Shown here piece after piece: positions 24,201 to 56,409 of a DNA stretch of 64,000 nt. Numbering within the stretch: position 1 is the stretch's first letter; every line of letters starts with the position of its first letter. A program made the translations under genes and the position numbers. The notes under the pieces are model-generated. The model did no database searches. It was not told the DNA's origin and saw only the letters and a list, made by a program, of their open reading frames with translations. The DNA lies in the IMG/VR virus record IMGVR_UViG_3300025133_009608, positions 62,001 to 126,000 of that record; one strand, given 5' to 3'.

Positions 24201-24816
24201 TTCCCCGCCGGGATAGGTCTGCGCCAAAAATACTCTGTACGTCATTGTGAGCAATGCTTATAATCTCGTCATCCGTGTTCGTAAAGTTGCACGATGTACC
24301 AGTAAGCCCGCCCTCCGCCGCATATAGGCCGAGAAGCCGAGCCTCTTCGATCCTCATTGAAGAACGGGGATTGACTACGGGCAGTGCGCGTGGGGAGGCA
24401 ACAAAGTCCCCGACGATCAAATCTTCGGCAGGTATACATTCCGTATCGGATATCATTACGGGATGGGTACGGGAAACTCTCTCGATACCACCAGAGGTCA
24501 TCTCTACTTCTAAGATGTCCTTTTCTCCGGACAGGTGCGTTGCTTCAACTTCCACTGGGCGCATAAGGAGGTCTTCGTCCAACCCCCATATCCAGAACTC
24601 CTTAAAGTTCTCATGGAGATCTTTGACGGTTATCTTTTCTCCAGAAAACGCCTCGGTCAGAATCGTATCCCCAGAAAGGCACTTCCCGGACCCGTTGGAC
24701 TTTCCATAATCTCCCTCTGTATTTCCAATCAGGAGTACCGACTGGAACTGGGAAAAATCAATCTCACTATCTGCGTGAGAGAAAAAGTTTTTTAACTTCA
24801 AACTAAGTGGAATCAT
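21289..24816 (-). CDS. sbcC: SbcC/Rad50 SMC-like ATPase interrupted by an intein
   Basis: LKNFFSH, Walker A NGSGK|SS split by the intein, coiled coils with Zn hook CYVC, signature LSGGEK, Walker B LLLDE and H-loop ITHD. Confidence 0.9.
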   Translation of the reverse strand: MIPLSLKLKNFFSHADSEIDFSQFQSVLLIGNTEGDYGKSNGSGKCLSGDTILTEAFSGEKITVKDLHENFKEFWIWGLDEDLLMRPVEVEATHLSGEKDILEVEMTSGGIERVSRTHPVMISDTECIPAEDLIVGDFVASPRALPVVNPRSSMRIEEARLLGLYAAEGGLTGTSCNFTNTDDEIISIAHNDVQSIFGADLSRRGITYSLVITKNIKDIRRQILDRMIQIGLSLKKESPSNHKRIESLSSTLCYDKLISYDDSNLTSLAKVANSPRTAREFLSKHALWGSLAINKRVPRAIFSESEENVGAFVGMFFSGDGYVSSSDSSSPEVSIGLGSKGFVYDLQELFLRFGIKASIRYKRVADKYDSWVLSIHSNYNNILKFYNLVDGHVYGPKRSRIDTLIASSRKRKANPNRDVIPSSLFCGEIIEGIESGGLRGHRSELRLTKRQLSQSNMSRERLGKYADALGSNRLRSLSESDIYWDKIKRIDSIGKAQTYDIQVGNDTHLYALNGFITHNSSIFESMLWVLFNKARSAMMDDIVLWGETSCCVEFEFQHNNRVYRVIRERNRGSSTSTVELAQKDDTGAWKDLSGSTSGATNSSIEELIGLDHKTFTSSIYFRQNDISEFAEADPSRKKDILKSIVDISRWDSYEKEAKKKARLLKSETDILEAAVSTYAETVEDLGDASAELKEVTTIVANAKKELSATNKHLEGLVSQYSNMKKALDTDKYDKILESIAALEEREADLSGDANELSQQVEDKTDEVDAEQKKIEEKRASLSQLSKVESCDDKLSELREELISLSSSGSSAKDALGSLSEIHITPGECYVCHQAIESSLYESLRDDHKEKSDRYSESMTRAASKIRIVKKSISDYEGYKKENLRIDTLEKELSSFEFRHSILSEGLEREKKKLIELKRVLGNVSSKLSVNKDILKSLQNSDFQVLRDKVKDLKDRREDLDSIISGNSEDVGRLTERVSQLEQSVKDMRGKKTSLSSKLKDISLFKSMSKMMGKNGIQTILLDGIIEDLESSSNKILSSICNEPSTITLETQRTGSDGVSTVETLDLKVKKDGVLHGFKSLSGGEKFRISLSLRVALSDLSSRYGGSSLEFLLLDEVNSPLDRFGVETLFVSVIRALEAQYKIMVITHDETLKEKFDHVIDVTKVNGKSSIDFLAR
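23260..24681 (-). mobile_element. Intein (474 aa) with LAGLIDADG homing endonuclease in the SbcC P-loop
   Basis: Begins CLSGDT and ends YDIQVGNDTHLYALNGFITHN before Ser+1. LAGLIDADG-like blocks LLGLYAAEG and FVGMFFSGDG. Excision restores GSGKSSIFESMLW. Confidence 0.92.
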
Positions 24817-31400: not shown

Positions 31401-31999
31401 TCGGGAGCCCCTCCTGCAAAGTCTCCATCACTAACTATAGATGAGCCCGAGAGCGAGTCGCTATATGCCTGAATGTCACCACGAACAGATAATGCATAAT
31501 CATCATTTTGGTCCATATTTTGAACCCTTATGCCAACACTCTTCGCGGAATATCTGTATACAAATCCACTATTCGCACCAAAACTTCCCATTTCATTAAA
31601 CTGAACCTGGGTGTCCTCTCCCGCTGCCGATGCTTCAAATCCAGAAAGATCCAGATAATAACACCTTTCTCCTTCTACTATTTCATAAATCGGAATAGCC
31701 TTATCTATCTCGGACTCGGGATAGCATTGGATATTTCTAGCATGAACTGCACCATCGCCTAGATTTATATTCTTCAACTGAGAAGTAACATGACTTTCTA
31801 GGTTAATCTTTTGGGCGTGGCCATCCATATGTTGGCCATCATGGATGTGGCCGGATACTTGCGGGTCATCTGGCTCCAGTAAATCTCCGGCAATAGTCGA
31901 GTGTAATCCCCCAAACAATGAGTTTGCGAACTCGCTCGTTACAATAACCCTACCAGAATCATAAAATGAGGTTAATTTATCGTTACTATCTATTGCCAC
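28496..31999 (-). CDS. Tail fibre / adhesin-like protein with C-terminal PKD/Ig-like repeats
   Basis: GLVGIGTSSPNRRLHIVG fibre motif; four Ig/PKD-like modules (SINGSGSSDPDGDDITYIWT, NQAPT...GTYTVRLTVTDDDGA); N-terminus paralogous to the 32009 gene. Confidence 0.7.
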   Translation of the reverse strand: MAIDSNDKLTSFYDSGRVIVTSEFANSLFGGLHSTIAGDLLEPDDPQVSGHIHDGQHMDGHAQKINLESHVTSQLKNINLGDGAVHARNIQCYPESEIDKAIPIYEIVEGERCYYLDLSGFEASAAGEDTQVQFNEMGSFGANSGFVYRYSAKSVGIRVQNMDQNDDYALSVRGDIQAYSDSLSGSSIVSDGDFAGGAPDWLGTNGFMVDVGSEYAIYSHDAAGGELSQDISSSVTPNRWYILNYSVSNFVNYGTISAELTNDIASDNITLSLENGSHSVEFKSNEIPSIFKIRVSSGDLSEGFVLDDITLTEMLGGNIDVHGTITGGGQSGIKINSEGLVGIGTSSPNRRLHIVGDGIDSPVKIENIQLGAGAAIVVDGSGNIYTDPTLGVQNLFSNINIVDDSFGVASGGPIIADASSDTLTLDAGTGIEIAGNAATDTVSILLNADLDDLNNVNDPPGLAGSGDVLIWDGYVWGPGDAAGGGESEVKFFSQWTSTADWVQKFGDPDFKDAQDWDPADVATYDQMAYRHRFAPYVFYVPDFANNNNPGLVGNTIRILRDSSQVSFGMGGVWPIPMFNLTTAIPLNGDLSAGVGASIVGSHQASLPGYLDAVSGFPDDPPSSCRVTLYFLLAEGVQGTSANFNVDLLCMRPVGPLNAPMLEYQDGELIWSGLNSGQHSSTTIMRNIHSYPGVVNGTLVVSDFSPLKIDLSKINGGLCTFTTVVTGAAAGGYFGTAQGVDENPVADAIALIGARLLWIWDTPAEEGQQNQQQENSPPSSKLHMTHEGEQTQLDSGGVVNDDTNVSINGSGSSDPDGDDITYIWTLSIDGVAQPDPGNVSSFVVNTAAIGGSNVEVGLTVSDGTLNSLESIATFGVIALNQAPTVTVDAVSGVLETGPGQNIDIAATAADVDGVIAVYAWTIDSEPQGATASFTSPNTEDTSFITDTIGTYTVRLTVTDDDGATAFDVRTFVVASPNQAPTVTVDAVSGVLETGPGQNIDIAATAADVDGVIAVYAWTIDSEPQGATASFTSPNTEDTSFITDTIGTYTVRLTVTDDDGATAFDVRTFVVASPNQAPTADITGPSIGQTGALVYFLGSNSFDPDGSLAAYDWSITQQPPGSSPVFSSINGGVDRKFIADIPGVYRITLRVMDNDGEWSPIVFLDFTAT
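28768..29365. repeat. Perfect 291-bp tandem duplication (97-aa Ig/PKD module x2, plus the start of a third)
   Basis: Units 28768-29058 and 29059-29349 read identical base for base; CGGTAGGAGCCTGATT recurs at 29350. Confidence 0.95.
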
Positions 32000-36452: not shown

Positions 36453-37456
36453 TCTATTTTAATATTATGCTCTTCTCCTATGGCCCCTCTCATCTGTTGG
36501 GCGATCCACTGATGTTCTATCTGTGCGTGCGTAGAATCTTTCAAATTAAGATATCCCTTAAAATCATCTATATAAAAGGAAATATATAACTCGGTTATTC
36601 GCCCTTCTGGTAAAATGTATCGAGCAACCTCTCTTAATCTTTTATGTTCATCATTTGATATTATCCCATCTTTTTTTGCAATCCTCGATGACTTCATTAA
36701 TCTAAGGTATTCTTCGAAAACAGCCGCTACTGATGATCGGTATATATCAAGCATTATAGAACTACATGCAGAATCTCCAATAGTATGTCCCATTACCTTT
36801 CCGAATATTTCTGATGTATCATCAAATTTGCTAATAAAATCCTGCGGGACTATTCCGATCCTCTCGCTCGTCATATTTGCAGAACAAGTGCTATGTCCTA
36901 GGATCTGAATGGCTATTGAAAGTGGACACTTTATTCTCCAAGTTGCCCTACTTTGAGATTCAGAGCCAGCATCATGATATGAAACAAGCTCCACTTCCAT
37001 ATTGTGTTCTCCGAGCCTCTCACTTGCGTCAATTTGATTGTCAACTTTTTGCCCAAAAAGATCAAACTTTTCGACCTTTGCAGCAAGGGCTGGCGAATCT
37101 TCGACGAAAAGTTGCCACGCCGAAAGGCTACTATGCCCACCCTTTCTTTCGGATAATAGCGAGGTCTTTGCGAAGTTCCATAGATCCATTGTCATGGTAT
37201 AGACTCCTCCGGTCAGCTCTACTCTTGAAAACTTATTATGCAAGTAGCTATCCATGCCCACCACGGCTTCGTCTCGGCCCCATGAAAACGTCATGGTTAC
37301 GGACTCAAAGGGAGATGTATGAAGATTTTCAATAAGAAAATCAATTACTTCGTCAACCTCGTCGTCTGTTCTTTCTCCCGCCCTTGTCTCACCTGGGACT
37401 GATATCCATGCAGAGTTGGCAACATCTGTCAGATTTCCAGTTATTTTCAAATTCAC
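36449..37456 (-). CDS. ThyX (flavin-dependent thymidylate synthase)-like protein with degenerate active-site motif
   Basis: LHTSPFES, IKCPLSIAIQILGHSTCSANMTSERI (canonical ARQxxRHRxxSxNxxSxRY), EVARYILP and LNLKDSTHAQIE. Confidence 0.75.
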   Translation of the reverse strand: MNLKITGNLTDVANSAWISVPGETRAGERTDDEVDEVIDFLIENLHTSPFESVTMTFSWGRDEAVVGMDSYLHNKFSRVELTGGVYTMTMDLWNFAKTSLLSERKGGHSSLSAWQLFVEDSPALAAKVEKFDLFGQKVDNQIDASERLGEHNMEVELVSYHDAGSESQSRATWRIKCPLSIAIQILGHSTCSANMTSERIGIVPQDFISKFDDTSEIFGKVMGHTIGDSACSSIMLDIYRSSVAAVFEEYLRLMKSSRIAKKDGIISNDEHKRLREVARYILPEGRITELYISFYIDDFKGYLNLKDSTHAQIEHQWIAQQMRGAIGEEHNIKID

Positions 37457-38655
37457 TATTCGCTCTTTGACTTGCAGATCATTGTCAACTTTTTATCGTT
37501 ATCGAATACTATGTTTGCAGCCTCCATTATCGACTCTGGCGTAACCAAAGAAAGAGATGCCATATAGCTCTCGATCGATGGTAGTCCGATCAGCTTCTCT
37601 CTCATTCTGTACTGAGCCATGCCAGAAGCGCTCTCAATCAATCCGTAAGAAGATGCTCTCATTTTATTCTTTGCTCTTTGCAACTCTTCATCAGATATTC
37701 TCGTTGTCTTGATCTTCTCTACCTCGTCTGATATAACTGATAGCATTTCATCTACATTCTCCCCCCGAGTAGACCCGCTAATCAAGGAGAGGGAGCCTCG
37801 CTCCCATTCGTTTAGAGATGAAGATATTCCATAAACAAGTCCTCTTTTTTCTCTTACCTCTGTAAAGAGTCGGCTATCCATCCCTCCTCCGAGAACTGAC
37901 ATTAAAAGCCTAGTCGCCGGAATGTGGTCAGACCCTCGGTTTACTCCGGGGGTTCCTATCCAAACATAGGTATGCTCTAGTCCCGGCCTATTAATCTCGG
38001 CCACTTCGGAGCTAGAATACGAAGAGTCGGCATAATTAAAGCGCCGGGAAACCTTTCCGTTCTCTTTTCCAAAGTGCTTCTCCATAAGAAGATTTGCCTT
38101 TTCCTCGGAAAGATTAGAGCAAAGAGAAACAACCGCATCTCTTTTCTTGCAATATTCCTTGTGAAAGGCATCAACCTCATCTCTAGTAAACTTGCTAATT
38201 GTTTCCTGCGTTCCAATGACTGGCGTGCCGATATAATTGTCAAAAAACTTGTCGGAAAACTTATTCCAGATGTATGAATAATGATTATCTAATCTTGAGA
38301 TTTCCTCTTCCTTCACAACCTCTCTTTCTTTCAAAAACTCATCCTCTGGAAATACCGAATCAAATACTATGTTTGACATTATTTCCATTGCAACATCTAG
38401 ATTTTCGTATGGAACCGTTACGTGATATGCCACAATTTCATGAGAAGTGAAGGCATTTACAGACCCCCCTAAAAAGCCAATTTCCCTTTGAATTTCAAAT
38501 GCAGTTCTTTTGTTCGTACCCTTGAATATGCAATGCTCCAGCATATGTGCTATGCCGGGATTAAAATCCATAGATGACTCCGTTCTAGAGCCAGCATCAA
38601 AGGCTATTACAACCGTTGATAATTTGCTTTCTGTCTTGCTATATGCGTGAATCAT
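37456..38655 (-). CDS. M16 (insulinase/pitrilysin-family) zinc peptidase
   Basis: Inverted Zn motif GIAHMLEHCIFKGT, NAFTS, EREVVKEE, LGGGMDSRLFTEVREKRGLVY. Confidence 0.92.
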   Translation of the reverse strand: MIHAYSKTESKLSTVVIAFDAGSRTESSMDFNPGIAHMLEHCIFKGTNKRTAFEIQREIGFLGGSVNAFTSHEIVAYHVTVPYENLDVAMEIMSNIVFDSVFPEDEFLKEREVVKEEEISRLDNHYSYIWNKFSDKFFDNYIGTPVIGTQETISKFTRDEVDAFHKEYCKKRDAVVSLCSNLSEEKANLLMEKHFGKENGKVSRRFNYADSSYSSSEVAEINRPGLEHTYVWIGTPGVNRGSDHIPATRLLMSVLGGGMDSRLFTEVREKRGLVYGISSSLNEWERGSLSLISGSTRGENVDEMLSVISDEVEKIKTTRISDEELQRAKNKMRASSYGLIESASGMAQYRMREKLIGLPSIESYMASLSLVTPESIMEAANIVFDNDKKLTMICKSKSE

Positions 38656-38702
38656 TTGGTTCCTAAAAAAATGGCGACCAATTAACTGATCGCCATCATA
38701 TC

Positions 38703-39911
38703 TTACTTCTTTTTCTGTTCGATTACTACTTTCTTTCCGTATGGAAACTCAACTCCTCGGTCTTGATCGCAAACCGCCCACAACATTCTATACTTGGGCT
38801 TCTCTGGAAATGCGGCATACCCATCCGTAAAGATGACTAGTCCATCATAGTTCTTTTCCTCTGCAAGCTCCATTACCGGATGAAAACAAGTTCCGCCCCG
38901 ACCTACGATGTCAATCTTAGAAGCCTTTTTGGAGTACTCCTTTGGCTCTCCATAGATCTTGGTATCGAACTGAATGAAGTCGGCCTTTACGTGATCGATC
39001 ATCCCATTCAATTCTGTGGCGAAATATGAAAGTTGCTCGTCTGAAACTGATCCTGATGTATCAAATGCAATCAGAAGTCTACTAGTATAGTTTCTCTTAC
39101 TTCCCGGAGAAGTAACTCCATATCGCCTATTGGGGCGCATTCTTGTGTTCCTTCTCCCCATCATTACAAGCTTGTTGATAAAGTATCTAACTTCCTTCTT
39201 CCAATTGACAACCGGCTTGTTGGCCGCGATAATTTGAGCCGCAAGGTTACCAGAGATATTTCCCCAGCCCTTCTTCTCCTGCTCTTTAATCGCCTTCTCT
39301 GCGATATTTCGAACCTTTTCCTCTACAATGTCGTCTTCAAAATCTTCCCACATAGAGTGGTCATCGACAGTATCCCCCTTGCCTTCGATTACCTTTTCGA
39401 AGTCATTGTCCTCGCCTGCTTCTTTCTTCAGGCTTTCGTAATAAAACTCAGCAGACTCGTTGTTATTAAGATCGAACTGCTTTGGATAAAGCGCCCCGTC
39501 AGGAAGCCCTTCGATGTGACAGTTAATCGCCAAGTCTGCCGCAATATTATATCCACGAAAGTTATATGCAAAATGCTTTGCGCGAGTAAGGTGGTGAAGT
39601 AATACATGCAATGCCTCATGCTTCAATACTCCCCTAAGCTCAGTGGACGAAAGACCTTCGATAAACTCTGGATTATAATATAGCGCCAAGTCTACTCGCC
39701 GAATCACTCCGACCGCCATCGTAGGGATCTTTTTTGATTCGCGCTTATTAAGATGGAGGAATACCTCTCCATATAGTGGCTGAAAACATACAAGTTTTGA
39801 GATTGCAGATTCTAGCTTTGCTTTAATTTGTGAGTTTGCCATGATAATATCCTTTTCGACCTGGTTGGAAGTGTGAGGCATCTGTAACCCATGCCTCCCT
39901 GCGGTTTGCAA
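38703..39911 (-). CDS. Metallopeptidase-like (HExxH) plus VWA domain protein (DUF2201-like); likely start at MANSQIK
   Basis: LKHEALHVLL.H, NIAADLAIN, MIDAS DTSGSVS, GRGGTCF, LVIFTDGY. Confidence 0.8.
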   Translation of the reverse strand: MQTAGRHGLQMPHTSNQVEKDIIMANSQIKAKLESAISKLVCFQPLYGEVFLHLNKRESKKIPTMAVGVIRRVDLALYYNPEFIEGLSSTELRGVLKHEALHVLLHHLTRAKHFAYNFRGYNIAADLAINCHIEGLPDGALYPKQFDLNNNESAEFYYESLKKEAGEDNDFEKVIEGKGDTVDDHSMWEDFEDDIVEEKVRNIAEKAIKEQEKKGWGNISGNLAAQIIAANKPVVNWKKEVRYFINKLVMMGRRNTRMRPNRRYGVTSPGSKRNYTSRLLIAFDTSGSVSDEQLSYFATELNGMIDHVKADFIQFDTKIYGEPKEYSKKASKIDIVGRGGTCFHPVMELAEEKNYDGLVIFTDGYAAFPEKPKYRMLWAVCDQDRGVEFPYGKKVVIEQKKK

Positions 39912-39915
39912 CTAA

Positions 39916-40992
39916 CTAGTTAGTAAGATAGATTTGCTTCAAGTGCTCGCGGAAATCTTCATCTCCCTGCCACTCCATCACAATCTTCTTTGTCTTTGCG
40001 CCGCTAAGTAGCGCAACCCAAGACTGTGATGCAACATCGTTTGGAAGCATCATAAAGAACTCCCGAAGAGCCTCACGTTGCTTTGTCTTGGTCTTAGTAA
40101 GCGAACGACCGTTAACCTCTGCAACTACTGACCTTGCAAGCGCCGCGATAACCTCAATGTCATTGCAAGCACTCTCGATCTTTGGCTTGGTCTTTTCGAA
40201 GTTATCGAGAACATCTTCTGGCCGCAACTGAGAGAATTCATTCTCTACAAACTTCTGGAACATTACGGCGATCTCTCGGCCAAGCCATCCTTTTGCAACT
40301 TGTGTTAGCATTCCATCGTCTTTAGATTCAATGAGGCTCATCCCCATGATCGAATCGCTAAAAGCAACCCAGCTTCGACGCGAAGGATAAATACGGCCCG
40401 CTTCAAGGTTCCCGACTGGTGGGTCTAGAAGGTTTTGGTTTCGATTAATGAACTCAATACAAGTTGCATGAACCCCTTCTTCTCGCGCCCAGTCAAGCCA
40501 CTCTGTTGCAGATGGATCAAAGTCAACGTGAAACCATCGATCATGAAGTGCGGGATCTAGCTCGACCACATCATATTCATCGTCAGAGTTTACAGCCGCG
40601 ACTACTCGCCAGCCATCGGGAAGCTTTTGTCCATCCAATCGTCTGTCCAAGCAAATCTCAAAGACGGCTTGCAAGACATCTTTGGATGCCCGATTAAGCT
40701 CATCAAAAAACAGGATTCCGTGACTATCGGGATCTGTTGGCCACCACTCTTGCTTTAGAAAGCGAGTAACTCCATTTTCCGCGTCAAGGTGTGGCATACC
40801 TTTAATGTCACCAACCTCGCACTGAGAGAGGCGAACGTCCCAAAAGCCATAATCATTTCCACTCTCAGCGGAAAGCTCGTCGGCAGTTTGACGTACAACG
40901 CTGGACTTTCCAACCCCATGTTTTGCATGGAGCATAATGGACTTATCCGATGGCATTGTCTTTAGAACAGACTTTGTTTGTGCAATATTCAT
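39916..40992 (-). CDS. MoxR-like AAA+ ATPase
   Basis: HGVGKS, LFFDELNRA, VVAAVN, LDPALHDRW, PSRRSW; adjacent to the VWA gene. Confidence 0.85.
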   Translation of the reverse strand: MNIAQTKSVLKTMPSDKSIMLHAKHGVGKSSVVRQTADELSAESGNDYGFWDVRLSQCEVGDIKGMPHLDAENGVTRFLKQEWWPTDPDSHGILFFDELNRASKDVLQAVFEICLDRRLDGQKLPDGWRVVAAVNSDDEYDVVELDPALHDRWFHVDFDPSATEWLDWAREEGVHATCIEFINRNQNLLDPPVGNLEAGRIYPSRRSWVAFSDSIMGMSLIESKDDGMLTQVAKGWLGREIAVMFQKFVENEFSQLRPEDVLDNFEKTKPKIESACNDIEVIAALARSVVAEVNGRSLTKTKTKQREALREFFMMLPNDVASQSWVALLSGAKTKKIVMEWQGDEDFREHLKQIYLTN

Positions 40993-47481: not shown

Positions 47482-50400
47482 CTATCGGAGACGTCTGGCG
47501 AGATTAGTCTCTCCCAAGCCGTTTAATATGGCCGCGATGATACATGTGTTTGCTATCTTACCAAGAGTCTCTGTCCGGTCCGGGATGGGCGAATATTCGC
47601 CATTAGTTGTGGAAAAAAAATAGACCCCAAACCTTCCAAGGAGATAGTTTCCAAGCAGATCCCTGGCCGCTTGGACATATTCTGTAGGCTCGGGCGAGTT
47701 GTCTAATAAAACCTTTTTTAATCCTCCCCCGTCATTCCGAAACGCTCTTCCAGATAGATCGACGGAAGTGTTCGGGCTACTTATAGAATAAATATCACCG
47801 GGACCATTTCCTGTTTGATTGGAAATTAGATTACTGATGGTCCTGGTAGTAATCAACTCATTTACTTTGGCCTGAATTTCGGCCCCTTGATTCTGGCTAG
47901 CACGCGCAGCCGCTTGCTGCTGAGTCGGGGCGTTCGTGGGGGTTCTGCCGCTGAGTCCTGAAATGGATGTGCCAGCACCATTAGCAGCAGCAGCAGTATC
48001 CATATCCATAATCATTTTCTTTATATCGTTTTTAATTGCAGTATTCTCCATCCAAAGATCGACGAACCTTACGGTGCCTCCCGCGCTTCTCTTATATCTT
48101 CCAAATACATACATTCCATAAGGTTCTTCTCCATGCTTACTCCATAGGGAATCAAGATGGGAGCTGAGATTCGCGCTTCCAATTGCGTCCTTTGCCGACT
48201 CCCAAGCGTTATTTAATGCCGAATAACTGGGCAAGTTATCCGGCCACTCTTGGTCGCGGCTCCCAAAGAAGTTTCTAATAATATCGTCAGTTACACTCGC
48301 TTCCCTTTGGGTGTTCTCGACGGATGCATAAGGATCAAGTCGCACCCCACTAGCCTGCTGTGATTCGCTCATTTGATCAATGGTACTTTTCAGGCGAGAA
48401 AGAGCTGCTTCCGGACCGGATGAGGATTCCCAAGACTCAGCGTAACTTGCATCATTCCTCATTCTTGTAAAAAAAGGATCATGGGAAGCTGGAACGTATC
48501 CAGGATTGTTTTTAAAAGAATCATGAGCCGCTACCCAAAAATTATACCAAGCCGTCTGTGTATTTGAACCCCAATCATCGTCGATATTACCGGTGTAGTA
48601 TCGACCGGTTTGTAGTTCTGTTTGTATCTTTCCAATATTGCCGTTTGCGGCGGTTTGCCGTGGCTGCGGCGAATAATTAGGAAAGGGATTTACATTTCCG
48701 TTTGCTGAGGCGCCACCTGAGCCGCCTCTGGGGCCACCTCCTCTGGAGGCTCCAGCGGGTGGGGATTGACCGATGGGTTGCGCCGTCTTATCTAATGAAT
48801 CCTTTTTTTTTGATCTGCTCGATATTGCCCTTAGGGCCACATGATCATCTGCAAACGACTCCAGCATCCATGTAGCAGCGGACCCTGCTTTTGATAGCCA
48901 CCTTCCATTCATCTTAATCCAGAGTTTTCCTTCGTCGCTGGCATCGTCAATCGGCCCCGTTTGATCAGCATCAATATCGTCCTTCCAGGTATAATCTCTC
49001 AAAGGAATAACTATGCCCCTGCTTTGACGAGCTTGGGCTATGGTGTTGAGCGAGCGGAAAAAAAGCACTCTAGTATTTTCCGAATCAAATACGTGGTGGG
49101 CTCCACTATCATAGACTATGTGCGACACCATTTCTGGGTTTAGAATAAAGGGAGATTCGTCAAGATTTCCTTCGACTATTTCAAAATTGGTATCGCCCAC
49201 GGTTTTTGTATTATTTGCCCGGCTGGTGACTGCGACTGGAGCATAACCTCTATCATAAGCAGACTTGAGAGCTTCCAGGGTGTCCTTAGCACCTGCGTAG
49301 TAAGGAGCAGACTGACTCCCCGGATTAGTGCCGGTCCCGAATAAAAAATCGTTTAATTCAGTAACATCGTCATCCGAGCCCCCATGAGCAAGGTCTTGTG
49401 TTTGTTGCTCGAAGCTCTGTCTAAATAATGGAAAGGTGGATAAACTGCCGCGATTGTAGGCTCTTTTTATGCTCCTTATTATTACATCAAAAGTTGTTGC
49501 GTCCGTACTCTGAAATAGGTTGTCGTCGTCCTCTTTGATTGCAAGTCTCGCCGCGTCAAGAAAGCTGCCCATGGCACTGAAAATAGGATCACCTGTTGCC
49601 ATCTTTCTAATCATATTTGATCGAAGTAATGAAAGTCTCTCCAGCCGAGCATTATGGATATCATAAGCATGGCGCAACCCTTCGGCCGCAGCACGCGCAT
49701 CGTTGTAGAAAGGAGCAGATTGACGCCCCGGATTATTGCCGGTCCTGAATAAAAAATCGTTTAATTCAGTAACATCGTCATCCGAGCCCCCTTGAGCAAG
49801 GCCTTGTGTTTGTTGCTCGAAGCTCTGTTTAAATAATGGAAAGGTGGATAAATTGCCGCGATTGTACCGATCTAATAATACACGCTCAATTGATTCAAAG
49901 GCCGTGAAGTCACGGCCCTGAAATAGGTTGTCGTCGTCCTCGTTAATTGCTCTTTTTGTTGCCGCCAAAAAAGCCCGCATGGCAGGCCGAATAGTGTCAG
50001 GAGTATTCTTCTCCGGTTTGGCGGCCAAGTCATCAGGGGTATTCTGCGGAGCCTGCACAGGACCATGGAGGTCGCCCGTATAGGCCATCTTTCTAATCAT
50101 ATTTGATTGAGCGGCATACCCGGAGTTATTTAAAGCCAAAGCTAATTTCTTTAATTCATTATTCATTTTACTTTCCCTTGATGTAACAACCCTTGATTCA
50201 TCGCCGAAGCCCAGCCACGAAAAGAAGTCTTTCTCAGATTTATCTTTATTATTAGTAGGATTTCCAAGAACATTATACTCGGAAGTTCCGGAATCTTTTC
50301 TTTGAATATTAACGGGAGGTTGATCCTCCGGCAAATCCATTGGCGATGACTTTCCGAAGCCCGAAGAATCCGAAGCCTCTTGATCGCCATCTCCATAATT

Positions 50401-50640
50401 TATAACTTGCTTTTCAATTGCGCCGGGAACAGATCCAATCGGCATACTGGTAAGTCCTATTGCCTCTTTTACGTTTCTGGCCTTAATTCTTTCTGTCAAA
50501 GTTTTGCCCGATTGCTCCGCATCGAATTCGTGCTCGTCGGGATCTGACATGGGATAATTAACCTCTTCATTTCTTCTATTTAATGTTGGCATGTTTTCGG
50601 AGATTGGTGCCAAGTCCAATATAGAAATTTCTTTATCCAT
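47482..50640 (-). CDS. 1052-aa mosaic protein with an internal duplicated domain and a peptidoglycan-binding-like motif; possibly virion-associated
   Basis: Two copies of DDDNLFQ...YNRG.LSTFPLF.QSFEQQTQ.LA.GGSDDDVTELNDFLF; IQTELQTGRYYTGNIDDDWGSNTQTAW resembles PG_binding_1; ELKKLALALNNSG and SNMIRKMA motifs. Confidence 0.65.
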   Translation of the reverse strand: MDKEISILDLAPISENMPTLNRRNEEVNYPMSDPDEHEFDAEQSGKTLTERIKARNVKEAIGLTSMPIGSVPGAIEKQVINYGDGDQEASDSSGFGKSSPMDLPEDQPPVNIQRKDSGTSEYNVLGNPTNNKDKSEKDFFSWLGFGDESRVVTSRESKMNNELKKLALALNNSGYAAQSNMIRKMAYTGDLHGPVQAPQNTPDDLAAKPEKNTPDTIRPAMRAFLAATKRAINEDDDNLFQGRDFTAFESIERVLLDRYNRGNLSTFPLFKQSFEQQTQGLAQGGSDDDVTELNDFLFRTGNNPGRQSAPFYNDARAAAEGLRHAYDIHNARLERLSLLRSNMIRKMATGDPIFSAMGSFLDAARLAIKEDDDNLFQSTDATTFDVIIRSIKRAYNRGSLSTFPLFRQSFEQQTQDLAHGGSDDDVTELNDFLFGTGTNPGSQSAPYYAGAKDTLEALKSAYDRGYAPVAVTSRANNTKTVGDTNFEIVEGNLDESPFILNPEMVSHIVYDSGAHHVFDSENTRVLFFRSLNTIAQARQSRGIVIPLRDYTWKDDIDADQTGPIDDASDEGKLWIKMNGRWLSKAGSAATWMLESFADDHVALRAISSRSKKKDSLDKTAQPIGQSPPAGASRGGGPRGGSGGASANGNVNPFPNYSPQPRQTAANGNIGKIQTELQTGRYYTGNIDDDWGSNTQTAWYNFWVAAHDSFKNNPGYVPASHDPFFTRMRNDASYAESWESSSGPEAALSRLKSTIDQMSESQQASGVRLDPYASVENTQREASVTDDIIRNFFGSRDQEWPDNLPSYSALNNAWESAKDAIGSANLSSHLDSLWSKHGEEPYGMYVFGRYKRSAGGTVRFVDLWMENTAIKNDIKKMIMDMDTAAAANGAGTSISGLSGRTPTNAPTQQQAAARASQNQGAEIQAKVNELITTRTISNLISNQTGNGPGDIYSISSPNTSVDLSGRAFRNDGGGLKKVLLDNSPEPTEYVQAARDLLGNYLLGRFGVYFFSTTNGEYSPIPDRTETLGKIANTCIIAAILNGLGETNLARRLR
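49300..49990. repeat. Intragenic duplication with 408-bp period, plus a 23-bp exact repeat
   Basis: AATAAAAAATCGTTTAATTCAGTAACATCGTCATCCGAGCCCCC at 49340 and 49748; GCCATCTTTCTAATCATATTTGA at 49598 and 50084. Confidence 0.85.
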
Positions 50641-50643
50641 ATT

Positions 50644-51450
50644 TTAATCGTCGTAAACTTCTTCTTCTAAATCTTCTGCCGGAACTTCTTCCGGGGCTTC
50701 CGCTTCTTGTCTTTCCGCTTCTTCTCGGGCGAGTATTAATGATTCTTCGAGAGACTTCTTTCCGTCAATTAAAAGATTGAAAGCATTTACAAAGTACATC
50801 TCATCATCGAGGCCCCAAGTATTCCAATCCCAAAGATCTTCTCCGGAATATTGTTCCACCCAGTTTTCTAATTGTGATTCTGTTACCTTTTGCCCATTCT
50901 CGAATAAAACATCGAACTCTCCGAAGAATTGATCGACATTTCGATCTTGCTTTCCGCCCACGTTATTATCTGTGGTTGTCTCTGGGAAGCTTCCCCTTCC
51001 GTTAATTAGATCAAAGTCTCTAAAATAATCTTTCCATTTCTGATAAAGCGTTTCGATGGAATCGTCTTTTGTTCCTCCGAGTCTATCAATTAAGCCCGTT
51101 GAGTTTCCCCACCAATCAACGAACGGATAAGCCACCGCGCCTATGGTGGCGGCGATTGCTACTGCGGGCCAAGAAAAGATACCGGCGATGCCCGTTCCAA
51201 TGGCTCCAATTGCAGTGCCAAAAGTAAGACCTCCCGCTCCGGCGAAGGTTCCTGCCACTGATGCTGCTGCAAGCTCCATAGCCACAGACCCCGCGACGGC
51301 CCCGCCAACTCCAACAGCAGCTGCTCCGGCAAGATCAGACGGGTCATCAACTTCATTATATAACTCTTCTACTTCGCTTGCATAAGAGCTAAGACCGCGC
51401 TCATTTAGAGCTACGGATAATACCTTTAATTTATCAGAAACGCTTTGCAC
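50644..51450 (-). CDS. Hypothetical protein with long Gly/Ala hydrophobic (glycine-zipper-like) segment
   Basis: LAGAAAVGVGGAVAGSVAMELAAASVAGTFAGAGGLTFGTAIGAIGTGIAGIFSWPAVAIAATIGAVAY; N-terminal DKLKVLSVALNERG motif. Confidence 0.65.
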   Translation of the reverse strand: MQSVSDKLKVLSVALNERGLSSYASEVEELYNEVDDPSDLAGAAAVGVGGAVAGSVAMELAAASVAGTFAGAGGLTFGTAIGAIGTGIAGIFSWPAVAIAATIGAVAYPFVDWWGNSTGLIDRLGGTKDDSIETLYQKWKDYFRDFDLINGRGSFPETTTDNNVGGKQDRNVDQFFGEFDVLFENGQKVTESQLENWVEQYSGEDLWDWNTWGLDDEMYFVNAFNLLIDGKKSLEESLILAREEAERQEAEAPEEVPAEDLEEEVYDD

Positions 51451-51451
51451 C

Positions 51452-51814
51452 TCAACTCCCGTAAAAAGAACTCTCGCTTACAAACAATGCGGAGAGATCC
51501 AAAGATGACGACGCCTCTTTCTTGATGGCGGGCTTATCTGCGGCAAAGCTAGACTCGAAAAGCTCTTCCTCTCTTGAGTCTTCATCAGCGCTTTCATTAA
51601 GCGCAAATATAGGCTCTTCCATCATATTCTCTTCGGTGGTTGTGGCTGACGGTTCTTCTATGGTTAGCGGATCTTCCGGAAGTTGTTCCATAATATCGTT
51701 AAAGTCATCGCCCCAATCTGCGGTCTTATTTAGTACCGCGTCTAACTTGTCGGCCAAATCTTTATGGCCAAGCTGATCAAGGTGATTAGCGAGCTTTATT
51801 AATTCTTCCAACAT
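51452..51814 (-). CDS. Acidic hypothetical protein with KLANHLD motif
   Basis: MLEELIKLANHLDQLGHKDLADKLDAVLNKTAD. Confidence 0.7.
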   Translation of the reverse strand: MLEELIKLANHLDQLGHKDLADKLDAVLNKTADWGDDFNDIMEQLPEDPLTIEEPSATTTEENMMEEPIFALNESADEDSREEELFESSFAADKPAIKKEASSSLDLSALFVSESSFYGS

Positions 51815-51815
51815 T

Positions 51816-52775
51816 TTAACGGCTCACTTTTCCAACGGGATTTACAGAGAATATTCCATCTAACTTGCTCGATGCAGTTACGGCGTTATCATCGGCAAGG
51901 CTCCTTTGGGAGCCTGATGCTTGCTGACCTCCGCCCTCAGTGTAGTTAAATACGGTTGGCTCATCAAGGGTCACGGTTCCACTGGGGTAAGCTCCCGAAG
52001 CAACTCCTGCCATTTGATCGACATATTCGAATTGCTCACTTGTCGGCAATGCAGCCCAGTCTTCGTCCGAATATCCATACTCTTTCTTCGCGGCAGCTGC
52101 CTCTTCATCCGTGATGATAAACTGGGCTGTCTTATTTATTTTCACAACAATAGAGTCCAGCTTATCCGCCAAGTCTCTGTGTCCGATTTTGTCCAAGTGA
52201 TTGGCTAACTTTACTAGATCTTTTTGCATTTTAAATTCTCCCTTTAAATCAAAGCATTTTGCTATATTAGAATAACTATTAGTAGTAGAAGCAAATTTGC
52301 CTCTCCATTTGTTTATAAAAGTGCTTGAGGCATTTCCACCGGCACTATCCGCAGAGCTCTCAGAACTAAACTCATCTGTTATATTACCAGAAGAATCCTC
52401 TGTACTTTTAAATCCACTAAGATGATCTTGCTCATGATGGAGGACTTCAAGTACCGCGCCCATAATGTTCATAACATTAAAAGCCTTTTGAGAATCAATA
52501 TTTGGAAATGCCATAATATCAGCAGTAGTTACGCCGTCCAAGTGTTGTCGAAGATCTATATCCATTTTGGGATATACAATATTTATTCTATCCGGAATTC
52601 CATCCTGATTTTTATCCTCGTTAGAAACGTAGGCTCTAGCCTCTCCGCTCTGAAGTCCCTTCATGATGTTTGCCAAGGGAACTACATTATTAATTTCGCC
52701 AAGCGTTTGAAGCTTATTATAGACCGTTGGCATGATCTGTTCGAGGCTTCCTACTTGTGATTCTTTTATAATCAT
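51816..52775 (-). CDS. Hypothetical protein with HExxH and KLANHLD motifs
   Basis: EVLHHEQDHL; MQKDLVKLANHLDKIGHRDLADKLDSIVVKINKTAQ. Confidence 0.7.
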   Translation of the reverse strand: MIIKESQVGSLEQIMPTVYNKLQTLGEINNVVPLANIMKGLQSGEARAYVSNEDKNQDGIPDRINIVYPKMDIDLRQHLDGVTTADIMAFPNIDSQKAFNVMNIMGAVLEVLHHEQDHLSGFKSTEDSSGNITDEFSSESSADSAGGNASSTFINKWRGKFASTTNSYSNIAKCFDLKGEFKMQKDLVKLANHLDKIGHRDLADKLDSIVVKINKTAQFIITDEEAAAAKKEYGYSDEDWAALPTSEQFEYVDQMAGVASGAYPSGTVTLDEPTVFNYTEGGGQQASGSQRSLADDNAVTASSKLDGIFSVNPVGKVSR

Positions 52776-52777
52776 AT

Positions 52778-53254
52778 CTATCTTGTAACCGCCCTTTTTC
52801 CATCGACGTCGAACATCCTGGGCTTCTGTGGTTTATTATACCGAGTATTGACTGTAATTATATCAATACTATCCCCTCTCACCGCCGAGAAGAATACATT
52901 AAACGGACGGGATGGACTCACTACTCTTATCTCAATCCACTCTCTTTTTTTTGTAGAAGTATTTGATGAATTTGATAGAAACATATGAACAGCTCCAGAT
53001 GCAGAAGACGCAAAGTCCTGAGCAATCATTTCATTTAATTCTCTATTCGATAGAGTTTCCCAGTCCTCTCGGGAAACCCCTTGAGATCTCCTTCCTTCAT
53101 CACTCTTGCACGGCTTTCCGCCATAAAACAAACGATAACGGCACCTAACTGTTGTAGATATATTAATCTCCAGCCCAGTTCTTGGATCCGTTAGCCCTCC
53201 GGACTCCATTCCGGCTTCTTTTTTTATTACACCCTGACTCATTAAAGCATCCAA
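52778..53254 (-). CDS. Hypothetical protein
   Basis: 158-aa ORF beginning VIKKEAG; C-terminal beta-rich WIEIRVV...FFSAV..DSIDIITV. Confidence 0.5.
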   Translation of the reverse strand: MDALMSQGVIKKEAGMESGGLTDPRTGLEINISTTVRCRYRLFYGGKPCKSDEGRRSQGVSREDWETLSNRELNEMIAQDFASSASGAVHMFLSNSSNTSTKKREWIEIRVVSPSRPFNVFFSAVRGDSIDIITVNTRYNKPQKPRMFDVDGKRAVTR

Positions 53255-53655: not shown

Positions 53656-54466
53656 TAATTACTTTTGCAGAATAATATTCCGTTCCCATAATTGATGTCA
53701 AAAGGTGTATCGGAAGGCTCTTTGCCAATGTCGTCTGAACCCATTCATGCTTGGAGTCTGAAAACTTTAAAAGAAGATTCTCATACCTTCCTTTATACAA
53801 ATCCCTATGCTTAATAAGAGTCTCAAGTCCAGCATTTGATGCCTCTTCTGAGGCTTCGGACCGAATCTTTCTGGCCTCCTTTTCTGACAAAACCCCGGCG
53901 CTTATATAATGCCTATAAAGAAACCCGCGAACTCTATATCCAAACGAAACCTTGGTCGCCTTATCAAATAAGGCCGAGCGAACAAATAACGGAATAGTGC
54001 TCTCATCCTGCTTTGCCACCCCAGAGGCTATGCTTTCTAATATTCTAGATACATACGAAGTCCTTTCTGCTCTTTTCATTTCCTGAAAAAACAGCGGCTT
54101 CCAATCAAACTTTGGATTCAATCGGGCTGCCGACAAATAAATTGAATCGGAATTCCTAGCGATATGAGTTAGCTTTGTTTCCCCATATTCACATAATTCT
54201 TTAAAATTCGATAGATCGTCGATTATACTTGCCCAAAAAGGTGACTCGTTATATATGTCAACCCCGCCATTAACGAGGCTGGTCATTATTGCCTGTCTCG
54301 CACTTTCTGACAAGTCACTATAATACGGCTCCATTAGATGGAGATTGTTGGAGATAGTTCTCCGCGCAGCCTTGGCCACTTCAGATCTATCATAGGTATA
54401 ATGATTTGGCCGAAACAAACTATCCGTACCATACTTAATGAAAAAGTCTTTTATTTCCTTATTCAT
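53606..54466 (-). CDS. Helical-repeat (HEAT-like) family protein C
   Basis: ENLLLKFSDSKHEWVQTTLAKSLPIHLLTSIMG, similar to the 43309 gene. Confidence 0.55.
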   Translation of the reverse strand: MNKEIKDFFIKYGTDSLFRPNHYTYDRSEVAKAARRTISNNLHLMEPYYSDLSESARQAIMTSLVNGGVDIYNESPFWASIIDDLSNFKELCEYGETKLTHIARNSDSIYLSAARLNPKFDWKPLFFQEMKRAERTSYVSRILESIASGVAKQDESTIPLFVRSALFDKATKVSFGYRVRGFLYRHYISAGVLSEKEARKIRSEASEEASNAGLETLIKHRDLYKGRYENLLLKFSDSKHEWVQTTLAKSLPIHLLTSIMGTEYYSAKVIIERRMEEHEDGGPDDE

Positions 54467-54807: not shown

Positions 54808-56409
54808 CTATTCCTTGATATCTTCATCATAAATAGCGACTTCAGTAGTTAGAAGTGTTCCGCTGGCAGATGCGGCATGTTCCACTGCCGACCTTACAAC
54901 TTTCACCGGATCAATAACTCCGGACTTTATCATATCTGACTGAAAAGAATTCGTCAGAGCATTATATCCGCAAGTTGTATTTTTTGAGTTTATAATTTTC
55001 TGCATAAACTCATAAGGCTCTACTCCGGCATTGGTCAAGATCTGCTTAAACGGAGCACAAATTGCACGAGATACTATTCCAACTCCAACCGCCTCCTCTG
55101 CAGATAAAGAAGAATCTTTTAATAATTTTTTCAACTCCGGGACGCAATGCAACAGAGCAGCTCCCCCTCCTGGGACGATCCCCTCTTGAATCGCCGCCTG
55201 AACAGCATTTATCGAATCCTCCACTCGATCCTTTCTTTCTCTCATCTCCGCCTCTGACATTCCGCCAACCCTAAGTACCGCAACTGCCCCAGACAGCGTT
55301 GAGAGCCTATGCCGAAGAGATGCAGCCTGATGAGGGAACAGGTCAGAGCTTTCAAGCTGAGACTTTATACCTAGAATCCTAGTCTCCACATCAGCGGAGT
55401 CTCCGCCGCCATCTATTATGGTTGTCTTGTTTCTTGAAATAATTACTTTTCTTGCCGTTCCAAGATCCGAAAGCGATACGCTCCTAAGAGCATTTCCCCC
55501 CTCATTTGTCAGCATTCTCCCGCCACAAATTGTGGCAATATCACCTAACATTTCTGCTCGAATATCTCCAAAGCCAGGAGCCTTCACGGGACAGGAGTCA
55601 AGAGTTCCTCGGGCCTTATTTAAAACAAGAGTCTGCAAGGCCTCTGAGTTTACATCTTTTGCTATAATTACTACTGGCTTCGACGCTTCAGACGCGGCCT
55701 GTAATACAGACAAAAACTCCTGACTAGAAGTAAGGGCATCATCGTATGTAATAATAAATGGATTATCAAACTCAACTGTGAGCTTCTCTTGATTCGTAGA
55801 GAATGCAGGAGAAATATATCCCCTGTCGAATGATAGACCTTCAGTATAAGAGGTCGTTGTTTCTGAGCCAGCCGCCTCTTCTACGGAGATAATTCCATCA
55901 TCCCCAACCGTTGTCACTACCTCTGCGATTAGAGAGCCCAATTCGATATCATTATTCGCAGATATAATTGCAACATCTCTGACCGTATCCGTTCCAGAAA
56001 CCTCTGATGAAATATCTTTCAAAAAAGAGACGACAGTGCTTACTGCTATGTCTATTCCTCTTTTTATCAAAACTGGATTATGCCCAGCGGCAACCATCTT
56101 AGCTCCCTCGGTATAAATCGACTGAGCTAATATGGTTGCCGTTGTTGTTCCGTCACCGGCAACAGAGTTTGTTGATGAGGCAACTGATTTTATGAGCTGA
56201 GCACCCATGTTTTCTATCTTATCCGAAAGACTTATAGAACGAGCAACAGTCACCCCGTCCTTTGTAACCAAAGGGGGGCCGTAAGACCTGTCAATGGCGG
56301 CGTGCCTACCTTTTGGACCTAGAGTTACCTTGACAGCGTTTGCCAAAATATCTAATCCGATTTGCATTCCGCTTCTTGCATCAAGGCCTATCTTTACTTC
56401 TTTGCTCAT
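54808..56409 (-). CDS. groEL: Chaperonin GroEL/Cpn60-like, copy 2 (divergent)
   Basis: KVTLGPKGR, VTKDGVTVA, AGDGTTTATIL, ISANND, FDRGYISP, VKAPGFGD, EGIVPGGG, GVIDPVKV; no GGM tail. Confidence 0.93.
   Translation of the reverse strand: MSKEVKIGLDARSGMQIGLDILANAVKVTLGPKGRHAAIDRSYGPPLVTKDGVTVARSISLSDKIENMGAQLIKSVASSTNSVAGDGTTTATILAQSIYTEGAKMVAAGHNPVLIKRGIDIAVSTVVSFLKDISSEVSGTDTVRDVAIISANNDIELGSLIAEVVTTVGDDGIISVEEAAGSETTTSYTEGLSFDRGYISPAFSTNQEKLTVEFDNPFIITYDDALTSSQEFLSVLQAASEASKPVVIIAKDVNSEALQTLVLNKARGTLDSCPVKAPGFGDIRAEMLGDIATICGGRMLTNEGGNALRSVSLSDLGTARKVIISRNKTTIIDGGGDSADVETRILGIKSQLESSDLFPHQAASLRHRLSTLSGAVAVLRVGGMSEAEMRERKDRVEDSINAVQAAIQEGIVPGGGAALLHCVPELKKLLKDSSLSAEEAVGVGIVSRAICAPFKQILTNAGVEPYEFMQKIINSKNTTCGYNALTNSFQSDMIKSGVIDPVKVVRSAVEHAASASGTLLTTEVAIYDEDIKE

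What the first reader, a model, noticed from the sequence alone, without database searches (positions are those of the whole stretch)
47482..53254. Cluster of otherwise unrelated orphans sharing a KLA..LD..G..AD.LD helix and K-x-A/S motifs: possible capsid-targeting and maturation-cleavage system
Seen: MLEELIKLANHLDQLGHKDLADKLDAVLNKTAD (51452), MQKDLVKLANHLDKIGHRDLADKLDSIVVKINKTAQ (internal in 51816), ELKKLALALNNSGYAAQSNMIRKMAY (47482) and DKLKVLSVALNERGLSSYASEVEELY (50644). A weaker version KDIRNLGEAFQSLNMTSASVKLAGMLKTSS occurs in the plus-strand gene. Short K-x-A/S words (KTAQ, KTAD, KMAT, KEAG, KEAS, KFAS, KTAS, KLAS) sit at apparent domain borders, and SNMIRKMA is repeated before each duplicated domain in 47482. 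The cargo regions include a PG-binding-like motif, a glycine zipper and an HExxH. Established: T4 internal proteins carry a capsid-targeting sequence, and phiKZ-like head proteins are cut by the prohead protease at a short consensus. Inference: a shared packaging tag plus protease site for a set of internal, ejected proteins.
Basis: partly seen in the sequence, partly recalled or inferred. Interest (0 to 1): 0.8.

Follow-up and report, generated by a model that had tools for sequence, protein, structure and literature searches.

The report
Shared helical-hairpin tag in marine phage proteins
Four neighbouring orphan genes of an uncultured 316-kb marine phage share a real, previously undescribed 32-residue helix-turn-helix module that also heads hundreds of otherwise unrelated proteins in related large phages, most likely as a common docking or address tag, but its proposed role in capsid loading and cleavage is untested.

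Summary
C120 (residues 1-33) and D319 (183-218) carry a canonical 32-residue module (M.KEL[IV]KLANHLD..G....AD.LD..[IV][IL]K.A). A1052 (159-187) has a divergent variant, well supported. B268 (5-34) probably has one too. The plus-strand gene does not.

A profile search of 1.84 billion proteins found 378 cluster representatives. None has a Pfam, NCBIfam or PDB relative. The module was not found in GenBank phage records or in 185,579 prokaryotic species genomes. It occurs only on metagenomic viral contigs of 14-316 kb.

Most copies start at Met1. Many are internal, C-terminal or tandem, and up to about 14 genes per genome carry one, often in arrays. Recognisable cargo includes an HExxH peptidase-like domain, PG-binding-like and LysM/cell-wall-hydrolase domains, a Dps-like domain, a methyltransferase and a glycine zipper.

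The module is a helical hairpin, and two hairpins are predicted to pack as a four-helix unit. It usually ends in K-x-A. D-family genes keep an in-frame Shine-Dalgarno-like site plus ATG in front of the module, which suggests a nested short product.

The best reading is a portable docking/address tag. Capsid loading with K-x-A cleavage is plausible but unproven.

The parts
51816..52775 (-). D319: HExxH (zincin-like) N-domain, internal canonical module, variable linker and conserved C-terminal tail
   Evidence: 20 homologs found; H114, E115 and H118 are invariant in the 14 aligned. The AF2 model is poor (pLDDT 50) but places helices at 182-196 and 200-217.
52422..52436 (-). HExxH motif of D319 (residues 114-118, HEQDH)
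   Evidence: kept as HE..H in more distant D-like genes.
52122..52229 (-). Canonical hairpin module of D319 (residues 183-218), ending KTAQ
52227..52242 (-). In-frame Shine-Dalgarno-like GGGAG (52238-52242), 8-nt spacer and ATG (52227-52229) in front of the internal module: candidate nested start for a short product (module + linker + tail)
   Evidence: An SD-like motif precedes the ATG in all 13 distinct D-family loci, while the encoded residues vary. GGA makes up only 43% of Gly codons.
51819..51896 (-). C-terminal tail of D319 (residues 294-319)
   Evidence: A tail profile finds D-family members, C120 and several proteins with an N-terminal module.
51452..51814 (-). C120: module (1-33), acidic linker, C-terminal tail (89-120)
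51716..51814 (-). Canonical hairpin module of C120 (residues 1-33), ending KTAD
50644..51450 (-). B268: probable degenerate module (residues 5-34; 51349-51438), glycine-rich zipper or membrane-like segment (41-110; 51121-51330), acidic C-terminal part
   Evidence: module; zipper; weak PHROG matches to internal virion and tape-measure families over the Gly/Ala-rich part.
47482..50640 (-). A1052: clade-conserved N-domain (1-158), A-type module (159-187; 50080-50166), duplicated domain (178-327 and 340-463), KTAQ junction (614-621; 48778-48801), PG_binding_1-like segment (669-705; 48526-48636), variable C-terminal part
52778..53254 (-). E158: conserved neighbour immediately upstream of the D gene in most sampled D-family loci; no module
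   Evidence: homologs next to the D-family gene in about 15 distinct contigs; no family match.

Best explanation
The four genes carry a portable helix-turn-helix docking module of about 32 residues, which has not been described before. Helix 1 runs M1-L5-x-x-L8-A9-N10-H11-L12-D13, the turn is at G16, and helix 2 runs A21-D22-x-L24-D25-x-[IV]-[IL]-K-x-A.

The module is the constant part of a large, fast-diversifying multigene family in a clade of uncultured marine large phages. It is joined by a flexible, often acidic linker to unrelated cargo. By binding one common partner, another hairpin, or both, it would bring these proteins to one place.

The leading context is co-assembly or loading of accessory and ejected proteins, possibly into the prohead. 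The HExxH protein D319 is tethered by the same module and is a candidate processing enzyme for the conserved K-x-A junction.

Shown: the module's existence, spread, selection, positions, hairpin prediction and clustering. Inferred: docking, the partner, virion location and cleavage.
For: - Spread: 378 cluster representatives at E<=1e-3 among 1.84e9 proteins, 40-970 aa long and alike only in the module.
- Conservation: D13 is kept in 100%, D25 in 99%, G16 in 98% and L12 in 97% of 178 copies.
- Selection: the C and D copies share 19 of 32 residues but only 7 of 18 degenerate third positions, so selection acts on the protein and this is not a recent copy or a DNA element.
- In distant D homologs with about 30% identity in the N-domain, the module is nearly identical.
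- Clustering: module genes sit in arrays. A D-like gene is followed by 1-3 tagged genes in 7 contigs; 8 tagged genes lie within 9 kb in L019; at least 14 lie on one 223-kb contig; at least 5 lie in the window's own genome.
- Structure: a natural tandem double module is modelled with pLDDT 86 and pTM 0.70 as four helices (two hairpins), so hairpin-hairpin packing is plausible.
- Junction: the module end is K.A in 72% of copies against 5% of controls.
- Cargo is enzymatic or envelope-directed: zincin-like, 2xLysM plus Hydrolase_2 and a SAM methyltransferase, Dps-like, PG-binding-like.
- In two contigs tagged genes lie 1-2 genes upstream of the large terminase and portal genes.
Against: - No partner has been identified, and there are no virion, expression or cleavage data (no RNA run was listed).
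- The window cluster lies among replication, recombination and nucleotide-metabolism genes. Other copies in the same genome are next to ligase, glycosyltransferase, SLT and CCA-enzyme genes.
- Multiple, internal and C-terminal copies fit a general interaction domain as well as an address tag.
- The four-helix model is intramolecular and rests on 4 sequences.
- The overall K-x-A/S excess is modest.
Confidence: 0.55

Rival explanations
1. One reading: the module is a capsid-targeting sequence for internal, ejected proteins, and K-x-A is the maturation cleavage site of a phage protease.
For: - The module is mostly at Met1 (107 of 188 copies) and has a conserved K-x-A boundary.
- A1052 keeps three such junctions, each before a new domain.
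- The cargo types (PG-binding-like, LysM-hydrolase, glycine zipper, methyltransferase) resemble known packaged proteins.
- An HExxH protein carries the tag and has a nested in-frame start, as in protease/scaffold gene pairs.
- Some tagged genes lie next to the large terminase and portal genes.
- Precedents are the T4 CTS and the 30 N-terminal residues of P1 DarB (PMC9024508).
Against: - There is no virion or N-terminome evidence.
- The cluster is not in a recognisable head module in the window.
- 68 of 188 copies are internal or C-terminal, and tandem copies exist.
- Known large-phage prohead proteases cut after Glu (PMC5694885), not at K-x-A.
- Away from the module end, K-x-A sites are poorly conserved.
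Confidence: 0.25
2. The module is a self-association domain. Single hairpins pair into four-helix bundles, so tagged proteins form homo- or hetero-oligomers with each other, with no dedicated hub and no role in the virion.
For: - A two-helix hairpin has too small a core to be stable alone.
- The tandem double module is modelled as a compact four-helix unit (pTM 0.70).
- 34 of 150 proteins have two or more copies.
- The nearest folds are generic helical-repeat proteins.
Against: - The strictly conserved polar residues (N10, H11, D13, D22, D25) suggest a specific binding surface rather than only a hydrophobic zipper.
- Two sequence flavours coexist in one genome.
- The model is intramolecular only.
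Confidence: 0.2
3. The module binds a host factor, and the family is a set of host-takeover or anti-defence proteins delivered to one host target from within the infected cell.
For: - The cluster lies in an early/middle-type region, with a sigma-70-like promoter match upstream and among replication and metabolic genes.
- Cargo turnover is rapid, as in conflict genes.
Against: - The host is unknown, and no relative was found in 185,579 prokaryotic genomes.
- PG-binding and LysM-hydrolase cargo act outside the cytoplasm.
- The promoter match is only a consensus hit.
Confidence: 0.12
4. The similarity is chance, compositional bias, or a recent local duplication or DNA-level recombination linker with no function of its own.
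For: The motif is short and helical, and the B268 and plus-strand copies are weak.
Against: - E=1e-11 between C and D.
- 378 independent cluster representatives.
- Synonymous sites are saturated while the residues are kept.
- Shuffle controls are far below the observed profile scores.
Confidence: 0.02

Closest known systems
T4 capsid targeting sequence (CTS) of internal proteins IPI-III and Alt, and the N-terminal 30-residue packaging signal of P1 DarB
   Same: A short N-terminal element shared by otherwise unrelated proteins. In T4 and P1 it is sufficient to direct cargo into the prohead (PMC9024508; PMC5694885). [quoted passage not shown]
   Different: The T4 CTS is 10-20 residues long and is removed by cleavage after Glu (PMC5694885). 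The module here is a folded 32-residue hairpin. It also occurs internally, C-terminally and in tandem, ends in K-x-A, and shows no sequence similarity to the T4 or P1 signals. Encapsidation is untested.
phiKZ/SPN3US-type head protein propeptides cut by the prohead protease
   Same: Paralogous head or ejection proteins with shared N-terminal stretches and a short three-residue cleavage consensus (PMC5694885).
   Different: That consensus is A/S/G-x-E, with cleavage after Glu by a T4 gp21-like serine protease. Here the candidate junction is K-x-A, and the only tagged peptidase-like protein is an HExxH type.
P22 scaffolding protein C-terminal helix-turn-helix coat-binding domain (own knowledge; PDB 2GP8)
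   Same: A small helical hairpin that docks a protein to the inside of a procapsid. It is portable and has been used to load foreign cargo.
   Different: No sequence relation was found (the PDB profile search gave nothing). The P22 domain is basic and C-terminal. This module is about neutral (mean net charge -0.2) and mostly N-terminal.
Lambda C/Nu3 and similar nested protease/scaffold genes (own knowledge)
   Same: A peptidase gene with an in-frame internal start that would yield the C-terminal part as a separate protein. D319 has a conserved SD-like site plus ATG before its module, and C120 has the same module-linker-tail layout as the putative short product.
   Different: The D N-domain is a small HExxH domain, not an S49/ClpP- or herpesvirus-type prohead protease. 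Use of the internal start is inferred from sequence only.
Constant N-terminal trafficking domains of polymorphic effectors (LXG, MIX, PAAR/Rhs) and docking domains of PKS/NRPS (own knowledge)
   Same: A conserved terminal module plus a demarcation motif, followed by hypervariable cargo, with arrays of paralogs.
   Different: Those belong to cellular secretion or assembly-line systems. No homology was found, and the family here occurs only on viral contigs.

Membership tests
T4-type capsid targeting sequence | 10-20 residue N-terminal propeptide at the very start of the protein | tested here: not met
   The module is 32-36 residues long and is predicted as a folded hairpin. 107 of 188 copies start at residues 1-3, but 68 are internal or C-terminal.
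T4-type capsid targeting sequence | Removed by the prohead protease at an [LI]-x-E / A-x-E type site | tested here: not met
   The module boundary is K-x-A followed by Q/E/D/G, with no x-E consensus. Whether cleavage happens could not be tested.
T4-type capsid targeting sequence | Protein present in prohead/virion; tag sufficient for encapsidation | not testable with these tools
   The phage is uncultured. There is no proteome, and no RNA run was listed.
P22-type scaffolding coat-binding helix-turn-helix | Helix-turn-helix hairpin fold | tested here: met
   AF2 gives H182-196/H200-217 in D319 at low confidence and H2-14/H18-33 plus H39-51/H55-70 in a double module (pLDDT 86).
P22-type scaffolding coat-binding helix-turn-helix | Sequence or structural homology; basic binding face; C-terminal position | tested here: not met
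   No PDB sequence match and no significant Foldseek match. Mean net charge is -0.2, and most copies are N-terminal.
Zincin metallopeptidase (D319 N-domain) | HExxH motif conserved across homologs | tested here: met
   H114, E115 and H118 are invariant in 14 sequences, and HE..H is kept in distant D-like genes.
Zincin metallopeptidase (D319 N-domain) | Match to a peptidase family profile or fold; third zinc ligand | tested here: inconclusive
   No match in Pfam, PHROG, NCBIfam or PDB. The model has pLDDT 50. The Atlas gave only leads to Peptidase_M78 and a phage metallopeptidase family.
PG_binding_1 (A1052 residues 669-705) | Significant match to the peptidoglycan-binding domain profile | tested here: inconclusive
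   Pfam gave no hit at E<=0.1. The top two hits of the ortholog profile against PDB are PG-binding domains, at E=0.22 and 0.59. The Atlas leads are PG_binding_1/3 with a score of 0.81.
Nested protease/scaffold gene pair (lambda C/Nu3 type) | In-frame internal ribosome-binding site and start codon conserved among homologs | tested here: met
   An SD-like GGAG/AGGA lies 8-12 nt before the ATG in all 13 distinct D-family loci, while the encoded residues vary.
Nested protease/scaffold gene pair (lambda C/Nu3 type) | Two protein products made; the short one acts in head assembly | not testable with these tools
   There are no expression or protein data.

The most novel reading that the evidence does not exclude
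The module is the address label of a self-contained cargo sorting and processing system in marine large phages. Under this reading, dozens of polymorphic effector proteins per genome are recruited by hairpin-hairpin pairing with the same module on a dedicated HExxH peptidase. That peptidase is made in long and nested short forms. The recruited proteins are loaded into the prohead and released by cleavage at the K-x-A junction. This would be a new kind of protein-packaging code, unrelated to the T4 and phiKZ codes.
Probability: 0.15. Interest if true: 0.85.

Novelty: new variant of a known kind. Interest (0 to 1): 0.62.

Why it matters
The module gives a first handle on a large block of viral dark matter: hundreds of orphan protein families in abundant, uncultured marine large phages that share one constant element. 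If it is an address or docking tag, three things follow.
- It identifies which orphans act together.
- It predicts a common partner that can be searched for.
- It could serve as a portable tag for loading cargo into large capsids, as the T4 and P1 signals do.

The conserved in-frame start inside the peptidase gene, and the second shared C-terminal tail, add testable detail about how such phages organise accessory proteins.

Tried and rejected
**Family and similarity searches**
- Pfam, PHROGs and NCBIfam on the five cluster genes and their neighbours gave nothing usable. The only matches were low-complexity hits of the B268 Gly/Ala stretch.
- megablast of the region and tblastn of two module proteins and one cargo family against GenBank phages gave no match, even at E<=10.
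- The PDB profile search with the module gave only a chance 12-residue match to T4 RNA ligase 2.
- A scan of 185,579 species genomes found no relative.
- A literature search for the motif strings found no relevant paper.
- The 'moraphage' paper does not mention the markers of this genome, so no membership is claimed.

**Structure**
- The AF2 model of D319 was too poor for a fold search.
- Foldseek with the double-module model found only generic TPR-like and designed repeat proteins.

**Sequence-level tests**
- The canonical HMM alone does not detect the A1052 or B268 copies. Profile-profile comparison was needed.
- The plus-strand gene copy and a look-alike at the A1052 C-terminus were rejected.
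- The idea of a DNA-level repeat or recombination linker was rejected because third codon positions are saturated.

**Other**
- The promoter and terminator scan was uninformative apart from one sigma-70-like match.
- No RNA run was listed.
Full report
**Setting**

The window is part of a 316,664-bp metagenomic viral contig (IMG/VR UViG 3300025133_009608). Three marine metagenome runs hold it almost completely. Nearly all genes lie on the minus strand.

Recognisable genes are for replication, recombination and metabolism:
- DNA replication and repair: primase, UvsX-like recombinase, RuvC, SSB, DnaE, exonucleases, SbcD, and an SbcC/Rad50-like ATPase carrying an intein.
- Other: a sigma factor, an FtsK-like protein, an M16 peptidase, a MoxR/VWA set, IMPDH, PurA, GlnA and two Cpn60 paralogs.

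No tRNA gene was found, and there is no DNA-level relative among GenBank phages. The finding covers five tightly packed minus-strand genes, here called E158, D319, C120, B268 and A1052. None matches a curated family.

- C120 and D319. C120 residues 1-33 and D319 residues 183-218 match at E=1e-11. A profile of them picks out only these two in all six frames of the window. A syntenic ortholog cluster on another contig (L001) keeps the helix in all four genes, while the linkers and cargo diverge.
- A1052. The canonical profile does not see the A1052 or B268 copies. However, the first roughly 190 residues of A1052 are the only part conserved across the clade. In 11 relatives that part ends in a helix of the form EL.KLA.AL..SG[HY]..[QE]A..I..L. 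This A-type profile aligns in register with the canonical one (hhalign probability 94.9%, P=4e-8). Its score is 35.2, against at most 13.3 in 200 column shuffles.
- B268. Residues 5-34 align to the A-type profile at P=2.7e-4, and none of 200 shuffles reaches that score. In L008 a single 1311-residue protein joins the A-family N-domain and module directly to B-type cargo. B268 therefore probably carries a degenerate copy.
- Rejected copies. The copy proposed in the plus-strand gene, and a look-alike at the A1052 C-terminus, are not supported.

**How widespread is it?**

A profile search of 1.84 billion representative proteins found 378 clusters at E<=1e-3, and 30 at E<=1e-10. The proteins are 40 to 970 residues long and are alike only in this stretch.

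Across 178 copies the conservation is D13 100%, D25 99%, G16 98%, L12 97%, A9/A21/L5 about 90%, N10 83% and H11 78%. There are two flavours..IGHRDLADRLD.. and ..SKGLRKEADYLD... Both occur in the window's own genome, which holds at least three more module genes outside the window.

The module has no match in Pfam, NCBIfam or PDB. PHROGs gives only scattered single matches. There is no hit in 50,697 GenBank phage records, none in 185,579 prokaryotic species genomes, and no trace in the searchable literature. In IMG/VR it lies on viral contigs of 14 to 316 kb.

**Anatomy**

- Position. Of 188 copies in 150 representative proteins, 107 start at residues 1-3, 13 lie near the N-terminus, 54 are internal and 14 are C-terminal. 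Thirty-four proteins have two or more copies, and some are direct tandems.
- Fold. AF2 models a natural tandem as four helices, that is two hairpins of 13 and 16 residues with a 3-residue turn (pLDDT 86, pTM 0.70). Foldseek finds only generic helical-repeat proteins.
- Junction. The module closes with K-x-A in 72% of copies, against 5% of control windows. The following 30 residues are enriched in acidic residues.
- Selection. The C and D copies share 19 of 32 residues but only 7 of 18 degenerate third codon positions. The constraint is therefore on the protein. This is not a recent duplication or a DNA element.
- Gene order. Module genes are clustered. The clade shares the order H286-G103-E158-D, then 0-3 tagged genes, then an A-family protein, F197 and PurA. 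Other contigs carry arrays of up to 8 tagged genes in 9 kb, and at least 14 on one 223-kb contig.

**Two further shared features**

First, D-family proteins, C120 and several N-tagged proteins end in a common C-terminal tail. In relatives it reads RINKLAELMAGEF..PGSF.R. In the window it has the form SS.LD.[IL]F.S...G...

Second, in all 13 distinct D-family loci the internal module begins with ATG and is preceded at 8-12 nt by GGAG/AGGA. The encoded residues at that position vary (GE, GD, GS, GR, KD), and GGA accounts for only 43% of glycine codons. In the window the sequence is GGGAG at 52238-52242 and ATG at 52227-52229. This points to a nested in-frame start whose product (module-linker-tail) would have the same layout as C120.

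**Cargo**

- D319 has an invariant HExxH, but no peptidase family or fold could be assigned.
- A1052 has a duplicated domain, each copy preceded by SNMIRKMA. It also has a third junction, DSLDKTAQ, and a weakly supported PG_binding_1-like segment.
- B268 has a 70-residue Gly/Ala-rich zipper.
- Elsewhere the tag is joined to 2xLysM plus a cell-wall hydrolase and to a SAM methyltransferase. It is also joined to a Dps/ferritin-like domain and to PG-binding-like segments.
- Most cargo is unannotated.

**K-x-A/S**

Beyond the module end, the five genes hold 27 such words against 16.9 expected (1.6x). The rest of the window is at 0.92x. In A1052 only some sites are kept in orthologs, notably 184, 346 and 618. 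The junction motif is therefore real as the end of the module. Its use as a cleavage site is an inference.

**Interpretation**

The best-supported reading is a portable docking or address module that brings a changing set of proteins to a common partner or to each other. The HExxH protein is tethered in the same way.

The capsid-loading and maturation-cleavage model is a plausible special case. Evidence in its favour:
- the envelope-directed cargo;
- the tagged peptidase with a nested start, which recalls protease/scaffold gene pairs;
- the position of tagged genes just upstream of the large terminase and portal genes in two contigs;
- the T4 and P1 precedents (PMC9024508, PMC5694885).

Evidence against it:
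- the replication and metabolic setting of the window cluster;
- the setting of the other copies in this genome;
- the many non-N-terminal and tandem copies;
- a junction unlike the after-Glu sites of known large-phage prohead proteases (PMC5694885);
- the complete lack of protein-level data.

Self-association and host-factor binding remain open rivals. Chance and recent duplication are excluded for C, D and A.

**Verdict**

This is a genuine, undescribed and widespread protein module. I rate it a new variant of a known kind (shared targeting or docking tags on polymorphic cargo), with interest 0.62.

Noticed in passing
window 52227-52242 (-): A conserved in-frame Shine-Dalgarno-like site plus ATG lies inside D319, just before its module. 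It is kept in all 13 distinct D-family loci while the encoded residues vary, which suggests a nested short product.
   Followed up: partly
window 51819-51896 and 51455-51550 (-): A second shared element: a C-terminal tail common to D-family proteins, C120 and several N-tagged proteins from other contigs.
   Followed up: partly
window 21289-24816 (-): The SbcC/Rad50-like ATPase is interrupted by an intein with a LAGLIDADG homing-endonuclease domain.
   Followed up: no
window 2668-4314 and 54808-56409 (-): There are two Cpn60/GroEL paralogs in one phage genome. The second lies a few genes upstream of the cluster in the relatives whose upstream flank was read (L008, L009).
   Followed up: no
window 37456-40992 (-): An M16 (insulinase-type) peptidase, a DUF2201 metallopeptidase with a VWA domain, and a MoxR-like AAA ATPase lie in a row. 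No link to the module was tested.
   Followed up: no
window 10726-17376 and 28496-31999 (-): A 2216-residue orphan has no family match. A 1167-residue protein has PKD/Ig-like repeats only in its C-terminal part.
   Followed up: no
window 53672-53701 (-): A sigma-70-like promoter match (11 of 12) lies upstream of the G103-E158-D-C-B-A gene string. It is a consensus match only.
   Followed up: no
L041 6678-7574; L037 7494-8150; L030 2715-3470: Module proteins with recognisable cargo: 2xLysM plus Hydrolase_2, a SAM methyltransferase, and a Dps/ferritin-like domain with a C-terminal double module.
   Followed up: partly
L045 5956-11567; L041 5986-11833: In these contigs the module genes lie one or two genes upstream of the large terminase and portal genes.
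   Followed up: partly
L008 11326-15258: A 1311-residue protein fuses the A-family N-domain and module with B268-type cargo. This shows that cargo is shuffled at the module boundary.
   Followed up: partly
L040 5962-6375 and 10487-10984; L044 5917-6642: Three further module genes of the window's own genome lie outside the window. Their neighbours include DNA ligase, a hexapeptide transferase, a GT2 glycosyltransferase, an SLT transglycosylase and a CCA-adding enzyme.
   Followed up: partly
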